Positions 1 through 5,313 are shown, counted from the whole stretch's first letter. The stretch: DNA of 60,425 nucleotides, filler included, from Hausera hauseri (GCA_046269625.1; 11 parts of 11 records of this genome joined end to end with filler, not necessarily neighbours in it); one strand, 5' to 3'. Translations and numbers: made by a program. Notes: generated from the sequence alone by a model not told the origin.

Positions 1-55
1 GGTTGTATAGAATGTATAAAATGTTGGTTGGATGTGTGTGAAAAATAATGATTGA

Positions 56-110
56 ATGATCCCTGGCAGGGTTCGGAAAACTGGGGAAACGGGAATAACC
101 ACGGTTGAAA
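56..110 (+). repeat. Conserved non-coding element immediately 5' of the SL, copy 1
   Basis: ATGATCCCTGGCAGGGTTCGGAAAACTGGGGAAACGGGAATAACCA..TGAAA aligns with the reverse complement of 4122-4186. Confidence 0.85.
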
Positions 111-154
111 GCCGTCAAACGGTCTTTACAAAACCATTGTTTTATAATTGCATG
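111..154 (+). ncRNA. Flatworm-type spliced-leader exon (44 nt) fused to an mRNA-derived sequence; not an SL RNA gene
   Basis: GCCGTCAAACGGTCTTTACAAAACCATTGTTTTATAATTGCATG has the 5' GCCGT..ACGGTC hairpin and 3' TTGCATG of platyhelminth SLs. It is followed by a kinase 5' end, not a GT donor or Sm site. Confidence 0.8.
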
Positions 155-165
155 ATGCTTTCACA

Positions 166-391
166 ATGAGCAGTCTGAATGACTTTAAAAGATTACGGAA
201 AATCGGGCAAGGTGCATTTGGTAACGCGTGGTTAGTTGAAGCTAAAGCCGATAATATGAAATACGTTGTAAAAGAAATGGGTTCTTATAAGATGTTCGAA
301 AGAGAATGACTAGATGCCAGAAAAGAGATTCTTCTGCTATCGAAAATGAATCATCAAAATATCGTTACGTATTTGAAATACGAAGAAGAAG
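166..391 (+). pseudogene. NEK1/3/5-like Ser/Thr kinase N-lobe fragment
   Basis: MSSLNDFKRLRKIGQGAFGNAWLV..YVVKEM..ERE*LDARKEILLLSKMNHQNIVTY contains GxGxFG, the VxK lysine, the helix-C Glu and HxNIV. There is a premature TGA at 307-309 and the sequence is truncated after subdomain IV. Confidence 0.85.
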
Positions 392-397
392 GAAAAA

Positions 398-1340
398 TTG
401 CCAAATGAAAAGAAATTAGATGAATGGTACAAACCAAAATTAAAGGAAAATAACGCAATTGGAGCTTTGAAATGTGAAAACCAAGGATGGCAAAATATTC
501 ACTCAATGGATAAGGGCAAGAATAATTTAGATATTTGGAATCAGAGATATATGCTGACTAAGAAAATAACGCAGTTGGAAATTTGTAGTGTCACAGCATT
601 ATCATTTGTTACGATTTATAGAGGTCTTTTGGTAATAAATGTTACATGGAGAGGACGTACATATGTTGGTACCCTACTCGACAGTACAAAATATGATTTC
701 AGTTCATCACAAGCTCAAGACACTGGTATAAAAATAGAAAATTATCAATTTAATCGGTCAAACAGAGGAAAGAAAAGGACACCATCTGTTCATAATCCCT
801 GTACGCGGCCTGCTCGTCTTAGACACAAACATTGTCTAGAGGAAGCGAGTAACTCGTCAGAAATCGGAACTCGACGGATTTCATCGAGACACACACAAAA
901 CTGTTTGAACCAGTTAGATAACATTACAGTATCCGCTGCTCCAAGCATGAGTGGTGAATCCGATATCGATAGTTCGAAAACGTGTATATTTTCCAAGACC
1001 CGTTCGGTTACAAGGTCGGTCGCAAAAAAAAATCTAAGTCCGAACCGGACACCAGTGCCGAAGAAGGTCAAGAAACAACTAGTAAACTCATTCGATGTAC
1101 AAAATCCAACTGTTACAAACGAATTGTCAACAACATTGCCTTTAAATATCATTTGTTGATGGGTCACGGTGATAAAGATGAAATAAATTATGATAATGAC
1201 ATTAAAAACGAACTCAATTGTAATGATAATGAAGATAAAATGGACTGTCTGAAACCGGACAATTCCGTCATCACAGATGTCCCTATAATTGATGAAAAAA
1301 GTATTATTGCAAAAACCAAGATAAGCTGCCAAGCAGCTAA
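398..1340 (+). pseudogene. ZNF608/ZNF609 (Brakeless/Scribbler)-like fragment, frameshifted
   Basis: GLLVINVTWRGRTYVGTLLDSTKYD matches the conserved family block. A single C2H2-like finger, LIRCTKSNCYKRIVNNIAFKYHLLMGH, lies in the next frame (ORF 982-1344). Confidence 0.8.
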
Positions 1341-1509
1341 ATAAATATCATTGACAAAAATATTGATAAAGATTGCAAAAATTTAAAATTAGAAATTATG
1401 AAATGTACTATGAGTGTCCACGATATCCTGGTGTGGACAAGATTAAACAAACGAAAATTTATGAAAAATACTATTGTTGGAACAATAACATAATATTTAA
1501 TTGGTAGCA

Positions 1510-1538
1510 TCGTGGATCGAAACCACGCTCTGCTACCA
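1510..1538 (+). tRNA. 3' fragment of initiator tRNA-Met (about nt 48-76) including CCA, copy 1
   Basis: TCGTGGATCGAAACCACGCTCTGCTACCA has a perfect 5-bp T-stem, the initiator-type loop ATCGAAA (A54/A60), the acceptor strand CTCTGCTA and terminal CCA. Confidence 0.85.
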
Positions 1539-1578
1539 TTTGTTGGATACACATTAACATAATATTTAATTGGTAGAC

Positions 1579-1607
1579 TCGTGGATCGGAACCACGCTCT
1601 GCTACCA
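1579..1607 (+). tRNA. 3' fragment of initiator tRNA-Met including CCA, copy 2
   Basis: TCGTGGATCGGAACCACGCTCTGCTACCA differs from copy 1 only at 1589, which is tRNA position 58. Confidence 0.85.
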
Positions 1608-2077
1608 TTTGTTTGAACATTATCATAAGATTTTAATAATAAATTCGTCCTTGTCTCACATGGTTTGCTGGGCCCATTTCTGGCAAACCTTATTCCATGG
1701 TTCATATTACCCTCTATATAATCTACTCTACCATTTGGCGAAACATTAACATAGCATTTAACTGATAAACTCGTTTTTATATCACACGTTTTTCCCTTCA
1801 AATAATCCACCATATCCCTTTGGTTTCCCCTCCATTCCCCACCTGATATATAATTATATGTGAACCTATTTAAATTTATTTGTGCAATTTTCGCAGCCGT
1901 TGATAACGGAGTGCTGCTCTCCGGGGGATTTTCTCCACCATTAACTTTGTGTCTGTATACAAGCATTCTGAATTTATCATGCACACATACATCAAACACA
2001 CAAACCCTGGCGGGGTTCATCAAACTAAAAAACAAACAATAACTCACAACGATACTATTAACACGACACACAAATAC

Positions 2078-2704
2078 CTTCAGCGTCTTTATCAAGAGTC
2101 CTTCAGCGAACGTATCCTCTTCCACCGTAATTAGTAGTACGATTTTGTCACCAATTTCCTTCGCCAATTCATCTGGGACTTGTAGCTGACTCCCTGACTT
2201 TTCGTTCAAATCACAATCATCCACAGAACTGAGATTTCCAAATAAAGCAGTCACGTCTCGACGAATGAGTTTTGGAACGTTCAGTAAATCTAACTGATCA
2301 CCATATTCAAATTCTGATATACTTTTTTCACATATTTCTTCGTTATCAAATCGTGTTTTAGTTTCAGAATCATGCTGAGATATAAACATCGATACCAGTT
2401 CTAACGTTATAAATTCTAAAATATCCATTTCATAATTTTGCACTTGTTTCTGTAAATAAGACGATTGGGACATTTTTGATAGTCTATGTTTCGGAGGCCT
2501 TTCCTGGCCTGAATTCTCCATATTTTTTGGTGAGAGTCGAGAGGCATGACCCTCGAACTCGTCTGCAACGATAGCTATCCTTTTTTTCTTAAATTTCATA
2601 ATTTTATCTTTGAAATTCAATTCTTCTGTTTTTGTCCGTAACAGGACATTGTAGACAATAATTGTCCATTTCATAATTTGTAAATTTTCAATTTTCTCAA
2701 TCAT
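2078..2704 (-). pseudogene. Unidentified host-gene exon or fragment (N-terminal part of ORF 1337-2704)
   Basis: Protein-like composition ending at a donor-like AAG|GTATTT. The rest of the ORF runs through repeats. Confidence 0.35.
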
Positions 2705-3170
2705 TAATTATCAATTCTACTGCTATAGCAGTAGTACTTTCATACATCTATACACTTATTTATCTACGTACATTCATCAATATTTATATAAATTTATACA
2801 AGTGGGAATTCCCACAAATTATTGCAGCTATCAAATCTACCATAATACAACACTTTCATCAACGGAACCATTTGAGCAGCGTATCCTCTACATCTGCACT
2901 AACTTACGACTGTTATTTGCATGGAATTCGAGGGTAGATTTTATTATCTGTATTTCTCATCTTAGTCTATGATTCTGTCGTTTTAAAAATGACTAATAGT
3001 TCCTCGTTGATCGGAAAATACAGTTGGTATAGACGAGGTGTCGTTTTAATTAATTGGAACGTCAGTAAATGAAGCTTCAATATTACTGATCGGTAATGAA
3101 AGAATGGTGGTGCATCAAGAAGTTATAATAGCTCTCTGTAAATTTGAACAAAGGAGAATGTTGTCATATT

Positions 3171-4070
3171 TTAAGTTTCCAATTGCGTTATTTTCACTTT
3201 ACTGACATCCCTGGATTCTGATAAATGTTCAGTATCGTTTTGGAATTGATTTCCTTTCGTCGTCTCTTTTCTACTCCGACTTTTATTATTTGGAGTTGCT
3301 TTGCTACTCGATACAATCTCTTCATTCGATATATTTTCAACAATTACATCGGCAGATTGAGATTTATCTCTTTTGCGTAAAGTAGCTTTCCTTGGACTAC
3401 TTTTATCGTCAGATGCATTTGATTGATGAGAAATGGAAATACTTTGTGAGATATTGGCTTCATTAGTCGATTTTTCATTACCTGCCGATACCAACAAACT
3501 CCTTTCAAAATGCTCCAATAAACGTTCCTTTATCCCATTGTATTCCCTCGCCAAACGTAAGTAATCCGCAGACGTTGACATCAACGAAGACGACAACTGT
3601 ACGCCACTTAAAAATCCCTCATTAAAAATCCTCATAGTCTCAGCACATACATCACACGGACTGCTGCTCAAATCGGCAATACTCGTCTTCTGTGCAACAA
3701 CCTGATCTGTCAACATCGACACTAACTTATTCTCCATAGCCTCTCGTCTATTATTCGCCGTCATCTCGCGTATTTCCTTCTCCAACAATTTGTTTTCGCT
3801 CACCAGCAATTCATTCCGTTTTTCGTATAGTTTATTGTCATTTGTCAATTTCAATACGTTAATTTCGTCGCGCAATTTTACATTGTCATCGTTACATATC
3901 TATTGTTGGGCAATCTCGAGTAATCTGTTCTTCTATTGTTTAATGACGCTCTTGCTCTCATCAACTTCGGCTTTGAGTAACTTTATTTCTTGTTCACATT
4001 TTAATTTGTCAAAATTCACCAATTTCATATTATTCTTCAAATTACGTATATTGCTACTACATTTTGACAT
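3171..4070 (-). pseudogene. Coiled-coil protein pseudogene downstream of SL copy 2
   Basis: The frame MSKCSSNIRNLKNNMKL..KQ*KNRLLEIAQQ*ICNDDNVKLRDEINVLKL continues into ORF 3171-3875. It is heptad-rich, has two TAG stops and shows no visible intron. Confidence 0.6.
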
Positions 4071-4077
4071 GGTTCAA

Positions 4078-4121
4078 CATGCAATTATGAAACAATAGTT
4101 TTGTAAAGACCGTCTAACGGC
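4078..4121 (-). ncRNA. Flatworm-type spliced-leader exon (44 nt), copy 2
   Basis: The minus strand reads GCCGTTAGACGGTCTTTACAAAACTATTGTTTCATAATTGCATG, 40/44 identical to copy 1. Its 5' GCCGTTAGACGGTCTT resembles the planarian SL (recalled). Confidence 0.85.
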
Positions 4122-4186
4122 TTTCAGTCCTCGTAGACTATGGTTATTCTCGCTCTCCCAGTTTTCCAAACCCTTCCAGGGATCAT
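4122..4186 (-). repeat. Conserved non-coding element immediately 5' of the SL, copy 2
   Basis: ATGATCCCTGGAAGGGTTTGGAAAACTGGGAGAGCGAGAATAACCA-(insert)-TGAAA. Confidence 0.85.
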
Positions 4187-4796
4187 GTCACACTCATACT
4201 TATTTCGCACACTCTGTTTTTATATCACGCACATTCATTCAACCATTTTAACCTTTAACAACCCGATTTTTATCAACCAGTACACACAGTGCAACCAACA
4301 TGAACACACACATTTATACACATTCATACACACATATATATACACTATATATTTATATATACACTATATACATCCCCTACCCTTTTTCACTTAATCTTCT
4401 TGATGTTGGCCGGATTCCCCAACTAATCAGTCAGGTTCCAACAGACTGTATACCTACAATCAAAGCAAAACCTGAAAGAAAACCTGATGAATGAAGATAG
4501 AATAATTATTTCACCGATTCTGTGTCAAACAATCAAAAGTAATACGAATTTTGTTTAATTGTGATGTATATAGTTAAAATATGATATGCACGCATACACG
4601 TCATTTTACAATATTTTGTTTTCAATATGGTATTTGTGAGGTGGGATTGAAACGGATATTAACGTATAAATTTAATTCAAAGGTAATTCAGTAAACAGCC
4701 AACAGAAAGTTAGGAAATTCAGAAAAAAAGGAAAATAAGACTCATTTCACGAGTGAATTAGATAAATGTTATAGAAACTTTTATAATAAATATCTT

Positions 4797-5313
4797 ATGG
4801 ATAATTCTATTTTACAATCTTCAAGTGACGTTGAGGTCGGGATGGTAGATGCTCGATCTACTAACATGGCGACCAACGCTTCAAGAGACTTCTTCGTAAA
4901 GAAATTGATGCCAAAAGAATTCCAGAAAGGTGACTACGTGGAAACCTTTATGGGAAAATGCGAGAGATACTTCGACTTTATAAAGATGTCGGAGAAGGAC
5001 CGTGAAACTGTGGTCCTGTGCCTGTTGGCGGAACAGGCACAGGAAAAATACAATTTGGTGAACTAGAAGGTTAAAGGGTACCAAAGCAGGTTGAGAAAAG
5101 CATTTTCAAAGCCCACAACACAGTGCGGATATATGTATGAGGCATTGAACTGCAGAATGAGGAGGGGGGAGAACCGGAAGCCTACTTCAACAAAATCGAA
5201 CAACTGGGTGCTCTAACAGAGGGATTGATGATCTACTGTTGCGACAATCCAGAGATGAGAAAGGAAATCTACCGCAGTGACGAAAAAAGTGTTGAACAAA
5301 TCAAAGAGAAAAT
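4797..5313 (+). mobile_element. Ty3/Gypsy-like gag fragment, degenerate
   Basis: PKEFQKGDYVETFMGKCERYF..LLAEQAQEKY..LRKAFSK follows a capsid-like pattern, with a stop and a frameshift. Confidence 0.6.

What the first reader, a model, noticed from the sequence alone, without database searches (positions are those of the whole stretch)
1472..1762. Array of CCA-ended initiator-tRNA fragments with an m1A58 misincorporation signature
Seen: two 29-nt tRNAi-Met 3' pieces (1510-1538, 1579-1607) end in CCA and differ only at the base 18 nt upstream of the terminal A, which is tRNA position 58 (A vs G). They alternate with a ~30-bp unit present four times. Established: eukaryotic tRNA genes do not encode CCA, a normal PBS copy stops at m1A58 (18 nt), and RT read-through of m1A is mutagenic. 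Inference: mature modified tRNA was reverse-transcribed past m1A58, independently twice, and integrated. One spacer is framed by inverted tRNA ends (CTACCA-tt...aat-TGGTAG), as if both strands were tRNA-primed. The minus strand reads ..CCAACA-AA-TGGTAGCAGAGCG, like an LTR end plus PBS repeated in miniature.
Basis: partly seen in the sequence, partly recalled or inferred. Interest (0 to 1): 0.85.

Follow-up and report, generated by a model that had tools for sequence, protein, structure and literature searches.

The report
tRNA-primer copies inside a retrotransposon LTR end
The CCA-ended initiator-tRNA pieces are a real repeat at the end of a retrotransposon's long terminal repeat, where the tRNA primer was copied 10 bases past its usual stop at A58, but the A/G difference at position 58 is inherited, not two separate events.

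Summary
**Observation: confirmed.** Window 1511-1538 and 1580-1607 are 28-nt copies of this genome's own tRNAiMet, positions 49-76 with the added CCA. They differ only at position 58 (A at 1520, G at 1589).

**What it is.** It is not a local oddity: at least 179 such units occur genome-wide. They form the U5-end tandem repeat of a ~3-kb LTR (window 1475-4443, sense on the minus strand, termini TGTTGGAAC...GTTCCAACA).

- Related copies run straight into the true 18-nt tRNAiMet primer-binding site (PBS), which stops just before A58.
- One of them then continues into a Pao/BEL-type gag (DUF1759).
- Each unit repeats "LTR end + AA + PBS", with the PBS part extended to 28 nt.

**Best reading.** Plus-strand strong-stop synthesis read through m1A58 into the T arm, then switched back at an ACG microhomology. 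That duplicated the U5 end. Slippage and retrotransposition then amplified it.

**Position 58.** It is the most variable site (29/102 units). But G58 is linked to a unit subtype, is a synonymous third-codon change in an ORF running through the array, and lies in a hairpin loop. "Independently twice" is therefore not supported.

**Seen in passing.** The same LTRs carry a flatworm-type spliced leader followed by different host coding segments.

The parts
1475..4443 (-). LTR copy 1 (solo or truncated) of a tRNAiMet-primed Pao/BEL-like retrotransposon. Termini are TGTTGGAAC...GTTCCAACA.
   Evidence: The same order (array, ORF block, variable middle, conserved 5' block) is found in 4 more contigs with unrelated flanks. 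The ORF block lies directly upstream of the true PBS in L079 and L083. The first 71 nt are 94-100% identical in at least 40 copies.
1475..1609 (-). Two tRNA-type U5-end units (1475-1540, 66 nt; 1541-1609, 69 nt). In the sense strand each reads AA + 28-nt tRNA complement + about 37 nt of U5 end finishing in CCAACA.
   Evidence: All 26 core-to-core spacings in the family are multiples of 3.
1511..1538 (+). Copy of tRNAiMet positions 49-76 including CCA; A58 at 1520.
   Evidence: 28/28 match to the genes in L030 and L032 plus CCA.
1580..1607 (+). Second copy of tRNAiMet 49-76 including CCA; G at position 58 (1589).
   Evidence: 27/28 match.
1502..1509 (+). TGGTAGCA arm, complementary to TGCTACCA at 1531-1538, which closes a hairpin around the T arm. 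The second unit has TGGTAGAC at 1571-1578.
   Evidence: Sense-strand RNA folds at -19.4 and -14.2 kcal/mol, z -5.5 and -3.2. This arm is dimorphic TGG/TGA across the family.
1610..1648 (-). Plain U5 unit without a tRNA part.
   Evidence: It matches the 39-nt plain units that precede the true PBS in L081-L084 and L087.
1649..1733 (+). Older, degenerate, nearly full-length tRNAiMet-like insert in the same slot. It has an exact 12-mer of the anticodon arm at 1666-1677 and ends in CTACCA at 1728-1733.
   Evidence: Local score 24 against a shuffle maximum of 23 in 1000. Collinear global alignment is reached by 16 of 2000 shuffles. The 12-mer is kept in other LTR copies.
1337..2704 (-). 455-codon open frame. 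Positions 1475-2704 lie in the LTR and the last 46 codons run into the flank. It reads the array as ...TNGSRAWFRST...
   Evidence: Stops per frame 0/28/41. The frame is open for 270-420 codons in copies about 75% identical, with dN/dS 0.6-0.9. The same frame is open through the PBS into gag in other copies.
4078..4121 (-). Flatworm-type spliced-leader sequence inside the LTR, ending ...ATAATTGCATG. Conservation between copies stops exactly at its last G.
   Evidence: Compare the Macrostomum and Schistosoma leaders quoted in PMC8629364 and PMC3970683.
3171..4070 (-). Copy-specific host-like coding segment (coiled-coil ORF, two in-frame stops) that starts 7 nt after the spliced leader.
   Evidence: Low copy number: pieces of it match in four other contigs at 89-97% identity.
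4122..4443 (-). 5' (U3) part of the LTR.
1..1474 (+). Second, partial LTR copy in the opposite orientation. It has the conserved block with the spliced leader at 111-154, a kinase-like start at 166-309, and the first ~160 nt of the LTR ORF at 1313-1474. It is cut off where it meets copy 1.
   Evidence: Inverted repeats I1-I5.

Best explanation
The array is the U5-terminal tandem repeat of a long LTR (window 1475-4443, sense on the minus strand). The LTR belongs to a Pao/BEL-like retrotransposon that uses initiator tRNA-Met as its primer. Read on the element's sense strand, each unit is the last ~37 nt of the LTR (ending CCAACA), then AA, then the primer-binding site. The PBS part runs for 28 nt (tRNA positions 76 back to 49) instead of the normal 18 nt.

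Shown: the tRNA identity including CCA; the LTR context; the true 18-nt PBS in sister copies; the family-wide distribution; and the reading frame through the array.

Inferred: during plus-strand strong-stop synthesis the reverse transcriptase did not stop before m1A58. It copied the primer's T arm. The nascent end (...CCACG) then re-annealed at the ACG that begins the last plain U5 unit and copied that unit and the 18-nt PBS a second time. This put a 'U5 end + extended PBS' unit inside U5, which is inherited by both LTRs in the next cycle. An older, degenerate insert in the same slot suggests an earlier read-through of nearly the whole tRNA.

Unit number (1 to 4 or more) then changed by slippage or misaligned strand transfer between the identical 18-mers. 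The units spread by retrotransposition. Because the array lies in an ORF that continues through the PBS into gag, only in-frame unit lengths (63, 66, 69 nt) survive.

The A/G at position 58 is a family dimorphism at the least constrained site. It is the first base outside the canonical PBS, it faces a base that cannot pair (m1A), it lies in the hairpin loop, and the change is synonymous. Whether the first G arose as a misincorporation opposite m1A58 cannot be told from sequence.
For: - **tRNA origin:** own tRNAiMet genes lack CCA, and the units match positions 49-76 plus CCA.
- **Scale:** 179 units genome-wide against 0 for the control.
- **True element end:** the array always starts at TGTTGGAA next to unrelated flanks.
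- **Composite element:** the same arrangement recurs in 5 contigs with TG...CA inverted termini.
- **True junctions:** ...CCAACA AA TGGTAGCAGAGCGTGGTT plus a conserved leader in 11 loci. In L078 a tRNA-type unit sits directly before the true PBS.
- **Family:** gag DUF1759, E 3e-17, downstream in L081.
- **Insert slot:** plain 39-nt units and tRNA-type units differ by a 25-nt insert joined at a shared ACG.
- **Older insert:**
- **Reading frame:** open across the LTR end, PBS and leader. All 26 spacings are multiples of 3.
- **Constraint:** synonymous sites inside the 18-nt part vary 4/510, against 48/408 outside it (Fisher p 1e-13).
- **Published basis:** plus-strand strong stop occurs one nucleotide before m1A58 (PMC8599865).
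Against: - The window's own copy is not followed by a PBS or an internal region. It abuts another LTR fragment, so its LTR status rests on sister copies.
- No target-site duplication could be recognised in five full copies.
- No contig holds two LTRs flanking one element, because the assembly is too fragmented.
- The read-through and template switch are inferred, not observed. Expansion of the array could equally be DNA-level unequal exchange.
- T-stem positions 49-53 are about as conserved as the 18-nt part. This fits hairpin or tRNA-pairing constraint as well as regeneration from the primer.
- Units were collected with at most 5 mismatches in the core, which caps the visible divergence.
Confidence: 0.78

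Rival explanations
1. Two separate reverse transcriptions of mature tRNAiMet each ran past m1A58 with a different outcome at that base, and each product was integrated here.
For: CCA is present and the only difference between the two window copies is at position 58. Position 58 is the most variable site in the family.
Against: The two copies are adjacent units in register, with the same junction at position 49 and the same spacer. At least 179 such units exist, always at the end of one LTR family. G58 is linked to other unit-diagnostic bases.
Confidence: 0.03
2. One capture of tRNA sequence took place. All later duplication and copy-number change of the units was ordinary DNA-level unequal exchange or replication slippage in the genome. 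The conservation of the 28-mer reflects youth or hairpin constraint, not use as a primer site.
For: Tandem arrays of 63-69 nt commonly expand by slippage. Variation is confined to the hairpin loop, positions 55, 56 and 58. Both orders of A58 and G58 units occur.
Against: Spacer positions in the same units are far more variable than the 28-mer. Synonymous sites within the 18-nt part are almost invariant. Plain-unit arrays sit in exactly the place where strand transfer occurs.
Confidence: 0.3
3. The extended complementarity evolved gradually under selection for tighter primer binding, like the extended or bipartite PBS of Ty1 and Ty3. It was not copied from the tRNA.
For: Extended tRNAiMet-element pairing is known for Ty1 (PMC3681743).
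Against: The match is a contiguous 28/28 that includes loop bases. The insert is bounded by a microhomology, and plain units lack it entirely. An older insert carries anticodon-arm sequence that has no pairing role.
Confidence: 0.04
4. A tRNA-derived SINE or satellite unrelated to any LTR element.
For: It is a tandem, dispersed, tRNA-like sequence.
Against: There is no complete tRNA head or A box. The units include CCA, are antisense to a conserved ORF, are always terminal in one ~3-kb element, and are followed by the PBS, and in L081 by gag, in sister copies.
Confidence: 0.02

Closest known systems
Canonical retroviral and LTR-retrotransposon primer-binding site, with the plus-strand strong stop at m1A58
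   Same: An 18-nt complement of the tRNA 3' end lies 2 nt after the LTR's terminal CA. Sister copies stop exactly before A58 (PMC8599865).
   Different: Here extra copies of the junction lie inside U5 and carry 28 nt of tRNA complement, so they record synthesis beyond the stop.
Ty1 and Ty3 of yeast (tRNAiMet-primed, extended or bipartite PBS; in Ty1 the PBS lies within the GAG reading frame, from my own knowledge)
   Same: Same primer tRNA, additional complementarity to the T arm, a PBS embedded in an open frame, and TGTTGGAA-type LTR ends.
   Different: The complementarity here is a contiguous 28-nt block, tandemly repeated upstream of the true PBS. The element is Pao/BEL-like by its gag, and about 400 codons of the frame lie in the LTR.
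Aberrant retroviral junctions that retain PBS sequence (PMC2797772)
   Same: Primer-derived sequence is left attached to the U5 end of the DNA.
   Different: Those are single dead-end integrants in cell culture. Here the product was fixed inside a functional-looking LTR and amplified to at least 179 units.
tRNA-derived retropseudogenes and SINEs, and tRNA cDNAs with CCA in Neurospora retroplasmid variants (from my own knowledge)
   Same: Reverse-transcribed mature tRNA sequence that includes the post-transcriptional CCA.
   Different: These units are not free-standing inserts. They are antisense within an LTR, joined to the LTR end as a PBS would be.
Partial spliced-leader sequences in LTR and LINE loci of parasitic flatworms (PMC12582326)
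   Same: A spliced-leader sequence is embedded in retrotransposon DNA (the passing observation).
   Different: Here the leader is followed, copy by copy, by different host coding segments inside the LTR.

Membership tests
LTR of an LTR retrotransposon | TG...CA termini with a short inverted repeat | tested here: met
   TGTTGGAAC at 1475-1483 and GTTCCAACA at 4435-4443. The same ends occur in L070-L072 and L075, except for the left end of L071, which begins inside a unit, and of L075, which is degenerate.
LTR of an LTR retrotransposon | The 5' LTR is followed within a few nt by a PBS complementary to a tRNA 3' end | tested here: met
   Eleven sister loci read ...CA AA + 18-nt tRNAiMet complement, and the LTR ORF block is upstream in L079 and L083. 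The window's own copy has no PBS after it.
LTR of an LTR retrotransposon | Target-site duplication flanking the insertion | tested here: inconclusive
   No convincing 4-6 bp duplication in five copies. The copies are old (74-88% identity) and the window copy abuts another LTR.
LTR of an LTR retrotransposon | Two copies in direct orientation flanking gag-pol, with a polypurine tract before the 3' copy | not testable with these tools
L081 has a purine-rich tract just before a short LTR variant.
Pao/BEL retrotransposons | Gag with the DUF1759 domain | tested here: met
   L081:670-2475 hits PF03564 at E 3.3e-17, 63 bits against a cutoff of 25.
Pao/BEL retrotransposons | Pao-type protease, reverse transcriptase and integrase in pol | not tested
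   No locus in hand reaches pol.
m1A58 misincorporation signature | Mismatches concentrated at tRNA position 58 | tested here: met
   29/102 units vary at position 58, 13 each at 55 and 56, and at most 5 elsewhere. Position 58 accounts for 18 of the 55 listed single-mismatch units.
m1A58 misincorporation signature | The variants arose in independent copying events | tested here: not met
   G58 is linked to the TGG hairpin variant (24/27, p 1e-6) and to another spacer site. A58 and G58 units sit side by side in the same arrays.
m1A58 misincorporation signature | No other reason for that site to vary | tested here: not met
   It is a synonymous third-codon site (TTT/TTC) of the through-reading ORF, a loop base of the hairpin, and the first base outside the 18-nt PBS.
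tRNA gene, tRNA-derived SINE or retropseudogene | Recognisable tRNA fold or pol III boxes, and free-standing dispersed inserts | tested here: not met
   ARAGORN finds 0 genes and Rfam 0 hits. The units occur only as the terminal array of one LTR family.

The most novel reading that the evidence does not exclude
The LTR is a working record of two unusual strand-transfer tricks. (a) The internal 28-nt pseudo-PBS units are used as alternative primer or transfer sites and are re-copied from the tRNA each cycle. This would keep positions 59-76 invariant and make position 58, opposite m1A, recurrently mutable, so that it is a true modification footprint in genomic DNA. (b) The spliced-leader copy in the LTR acts as the start of R. 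Minus-strand cDNA that has strayed onto a co-packaged trans-spliced host mRNA can then transfer back through leader homology, loading different host 5' coding segments into the LTR.
Probability: 0.25. Interest if true: 0.85.

Novelty: new variant of a known kind. Interest (0 to 1): 0.58.

Why it matters
The stop of plus-strand strong-stop DNA at m1A58 is textbook retrovirology, but it is known mainly from in vitro and cell-culture work. Here a genome preserves, at scale, the product of that stop failing: once for about 10 extra nucleotides and probably once for almost the whole tRNA. It also shows that such products can be built into a replicating LTR rather than being dead ends.

Arrays of perfect tRNA-3'-end targets in U5 matter for two further questions. 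One is primer choice. The other is silencing by 3' tRNA fragments that target PBS sequences (review PMC7472051).

The finding also warns that a 'modification signature' read from two repeat copies can be mimicked by descent, codon position and RNA structure.

The passing observation, a spliced leader followed by varied host coding segments inside LTRs, would be a new route of host-gene capture if confirmed.

Tried and rejected
**Ideas dropped**
- **Ciliate-like genetic code.** Suggested by in-frame stops in the window's ORFs. Dropped because these are decayed captured segments.
- **DNA transposon with long TIRs (1377-1440 / 2632-2695).** The 'left TIR' is the 5' piece of a second LTR copy in the opposite orientation.
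- **Array lies downstream of pol.** An integrase ORF flanks the array in L014, but flanks of 30 arrays are mutually unrelated, so that is a nested insertion.
- **Window 4078-4626 is the LTR of the gag-like element at 4797.** Rejected: the conserved block ends at 4443, and the high-copy element starts at about 4634.
- **Pol III A/B boxes in the unit.** The spacing is impossible.

**Searches that gave nothing**
- ORF identification: Pfam found nothing above cutoff, the search for homologous proteins found nothing, and the protein atlas gave no usable hit.
- Target-site duplications: none convincing.
- Literature search for the leader sequence itself: no hit.

- The look-up of sequencing runs returned only coded, low-share DNA holders.
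Afterwards no external search was sent those places. A local blastn inside a script still had the whole LTR, including them, as subject.
LTR 5' flanks, spliced-leader RNA genes and full elements could therefore not be read.

**Handling notes**
- Locus L031 (C98545) carries a vertebrate-type tRNAiMet and looks like a contaminant, possibly human. It was displayed once before I suspected this and was not analysed further. Generic motif scans over all fetched loci passed over it without hits.
- For tabulating variation, a majority line of the 69-column unit alignment was printed. It is not reproduced here, and no consensus of the element or of any gene was built.

Full report
**1. Observation**

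Window 1474-1633 holds 2.4 copies of a 69-nt unit (D1, two 66-nt copies at 92%).

The assembly (868 Mb in 909,086 contigs) has two tRNAiMet genes with the matching T stem (L030 and L032). Both have A58 and are followed by AAT or AGT, so CCA is not encoded. A search that left the T loop free found only these two, both with A58.

Window 1511-1538 equals positions 49-76 plus CCA, 28 of 28. Window 1580-1607 differs only at position 58 (G at 1589 against A at 1520). The base before each piece (T) does not match C48 of the gene, so the homology is 28 nt, not 29.

ARAGORN and Rfam report nothing in the window.

**2. A genome-wide family**

- The two-unit stretch finds 52 scored matches out of 152 candidates.
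- The 28-mer with up to 3 mismatches occurs 179 times, against 0 for the reversed control. Forty-five of these are exact.
- In 30 loci the array begins at TGTTGGAA next to flanks that are unrelated to each other. It is therefore a true terminus of a mobile element.

**3. The element is an LTR**

- Homology to other contigs runs from the array through window ~2731.
- In four further contigs it resumes with a conserved block equal to window 4078-4443, in the same order and orientation.
- The unit so defined, window 1475-4443, starts with TGTTGGAAC and ends with GTTCCAACA. Its outer 71 nt at 4373-4443 are 94-100% identical in at least 40 copies.
- On the minus strand, eleven sister loci show this end followed by AA, then TGGTAGCAGAGCGTGGTT, the 18-nt complement of tRNAiMet 59-76. 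A conserved leader follows.
- In L079 and L083 the block homologous to window 2711-1846 lies directly upstream of that PBS.
- Downstream in L081 is a 602-codon frame with DUF1759, the Pao/BEL gag domain, at E 3e-17. It also has a weak ubiquitin-like match.
- Short LTR variants with the same termini exist: L081, 530 bp, and L087, 373 bp.

The window copy has no PBS or internal part. It abuts a second, partial, inverted LTR copy (window 1-1474). No target-site duplication could be recognised.

**4. Anatomy of the array (element sense strand)**

Sister LTRs end in tandem plain units of about 39 nt, each finishing in CCAACAAA, before the true PBS (L081-L084, L087).

The tRNA-type units (63, 66 or 69 nt) equal a plain unit plus a 25-nt insert at its start. 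That insert, together with the unit's own ACG, gives the 28-nt tRNA complement. The join therefore lies in a 3-nt microhomology.

In L078 a tRNA-type unit sits directly before the true PBS.

Upstream in the window, in the same slot between two plain units, lies an 85-nt insert (1649-1733). On the plus strand it ends in CTACCA and contains an exact 12-mer of the anticodon arm (1666-1677). It aligns collinearly with the tRNA:
- local score 24 against a shuffle maximum of 23 in 1000;
- global score reached by 16 of 2000 shuffles.

The 12-mer is kept in other copies. I read this as an older, longer read-through. The evidence for it is moderate.

**5. Mechanism (inferred)**

Plus-strand strong-stop DNA normally ends one nucleotide before m1A58 of the primer (PMC8599865). 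The units are what is expected if three things happened:
- synthesis continued into the T arm;
- the nascent end switched back onto the start of the last U5 unit;
- that unit and the PBS were copied again.

Because U5 of the 5' LTR is transcribed, the change passes to both LTRs at the next cycle. Identical 18-mers then allow misaligned transfer or slippage, which would give the 1 to 4 or more units seen. DNA-level unequal exchange is an alternative for the expansion step.

**6. A reading frame runs through the array**

- Window 1337-2704 (minus strand) is open for 455 codons, with stops per frame of 0/28/41.
- The homologous frame is open for 270-420 codons in copies about 75% identical. dN/dS is 0.6-0.9 in 20 of 21 pairs.
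- In ten copies the same frame is nearly free of stops for 300 nt after the PBS (19/86/40 per frame, with 14 of the 19 in two frameshifted copies). In L081 it continues into gag.
- All 26 core-to-core spacings are multiples of three.

The PBS and its copies thus appear to lie inside coding sequence, as in Ty1 (my own knowledge for that point).

**7. Position 58**

Among 102 units, position 58 varies in 29 (27 G, 1 T, 1 C). Positions 55 and 56 vary in 13 each, and every other site in 5 or fewer.

Four points argue against reading it as independent events:
- G58 is linked to the TGG form of the hairpin arm (24 of 27; Fisher p 1e-6) and to another spacer site. It is mostly a subtype marker.
- A58G and T55C are synonymous third-codon changes (TTT to TTC, CGA to CGG).
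- Positions 55, 56 and 58 are loop bases of a stable hairpin.
- Position 58 is the first base beyond the canonical PBS and faces a base that cannot pair.

Synonymous sites inside the 18-nt part vary 4/510, against 48/408 outside it (p 1e-13). This shows a nucleotide-level constraint on the PBS-like part.

All four combinations of the two linked sites occur. Some recurrence or exchange between units therefore exists, but two independent events in the window are not supported.

**8. The hairpin arm**

The plus-strand TGGTAG that frames the spacer is TGATAG in half the units. It corresponds to TTATCA or TGGTCA in plain units. It is better explained as native U5 sequence that partly matches the tRNA end than as a second primer.

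**9. Seen in passing**

The conserved 5' block of the LTR ends with a flatworm-type spliced leader at window 4078-4121 (minus strand) and again at 111-154 (plus strand). It resembles the Macrostomum and Schistosoma leaders (PMC8629364, PMC3970683).

Similarity between LTR copies stops exactly after ...TTGCATG. Each copy then has a different host-like segment, and in five of the seven an ATG follows within 2-11 nt:

| LTR copy | Segment after the leader | Evidence |
|---|---|---|
| Window copy 1 | coiled-coil ORF | |
| Window copy 2 | kinase-like start | Pkinase E 0.005, |
| L072 | GOLPH3-like | GPP34 E 1.5e-21, |
| L075 | VWA domain | E 2e-8, |
| L070, L071, L043 | other segments | |

The leader's 3' part occurs at least 128 times, followed by varied dinucleotides. 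A recent survey noted partial leaders in LTR and LINE loci of parasitic flatworms (PMC12582326).

My reading is that leader homology lets cDNA made on host mRNAs transfer back onto the element. This is a hypothesis only.

**10. Limits**

A flatworm is inferred from the leader.
- No expression data were obtained.

Noticed in passing
window 4078-4121 (-) and 111-154 (+); L043, L070, L071, L072, L075: A flatworm-type spliced-leader sequence sits inside the LTR. Similarity between copies ends exactly at its last base (...TTGCATG). Each copy then carries a different host-like coding segment, and in five of the seven an ATG follows within 2-11 nt: GOLPH3-like, VWA, kinase-like, coiled-coil and others. 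This suggests capture of trans-spliced host mRNA 5' parts into LTRs.
   Followed up: partly
window 1337-2704 (-); L012, L023, L036, L037, L038, L041; L081:502-2475: The LTR encodes a long open frame with no known domain (dN/dS 0.6-0.9). It stays open through the U5 repeats, the PBS and the leader into a gag with a weak ubiquitin-like match and DUF1759. About 400 codons of a gag extension would therefore be LTR-encoded.
   Followed up: partly
window 1-1474 (+): A second, partial copy of the same LTR family lies in the opposite orientation. It is truncated within the first ~50 codons of the LTR ORF, exactly where the U5 end of copy 1 begins. The two copies face each other and give the nested inverted repeats I1-I5.
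   Followed up: partly
window 446-481, 562-630 and 3127-3195: A ~35-70 nt block (core GAAAATAACGCAATTGGA, read as ..KITQLE..) is shared between the otherwise different middle segments of the two LTR copies. It also occurs in L036, L040, L043 and L045. Its role is unknown.
   Followed up: no
window 4634-5313 (+): This is the start of a different, very high-copy retroelement (5660 first-look candidates) beginning TGTGAGGTGGG. It has a gag-like ORF from 4797 that has several stops after codon 89. Pfam finds no match.
   Followed up: no
L081:100-700: A short (530 bp) variant of the LTR is preceded by a purine-rich tract (AAGGAGGGGGCAAA) and followed by the PBS and gag. This could be a tandem or shared-LTR arrangement.
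   Followed up: no
L039:1836-1870 and sister loci L077-L087: Right after the true 18-nt PBS the leader reads GCTGCTCTGC. This can pair with the AGCAGAGC inside the PBS, giving an acceptor-stem-like hairpin that would sequester the PBS.
   Followed up: no
L031 (G000:C98545): This contig has two vertebrate-type tRNAiMet genes about 1 kb apart, with composition unlike the rest of the genome. I take it for a vertebrate, possibly human, contaminant and left it alone after the first look.
   Followed up: no
L014:1656-1985 (-), L017, L022, L008: Arrays often sit next to fragments of other retroelements (integrase and protease ORFs), which shows dense nesting of elements in this genome.
   Followed up: no
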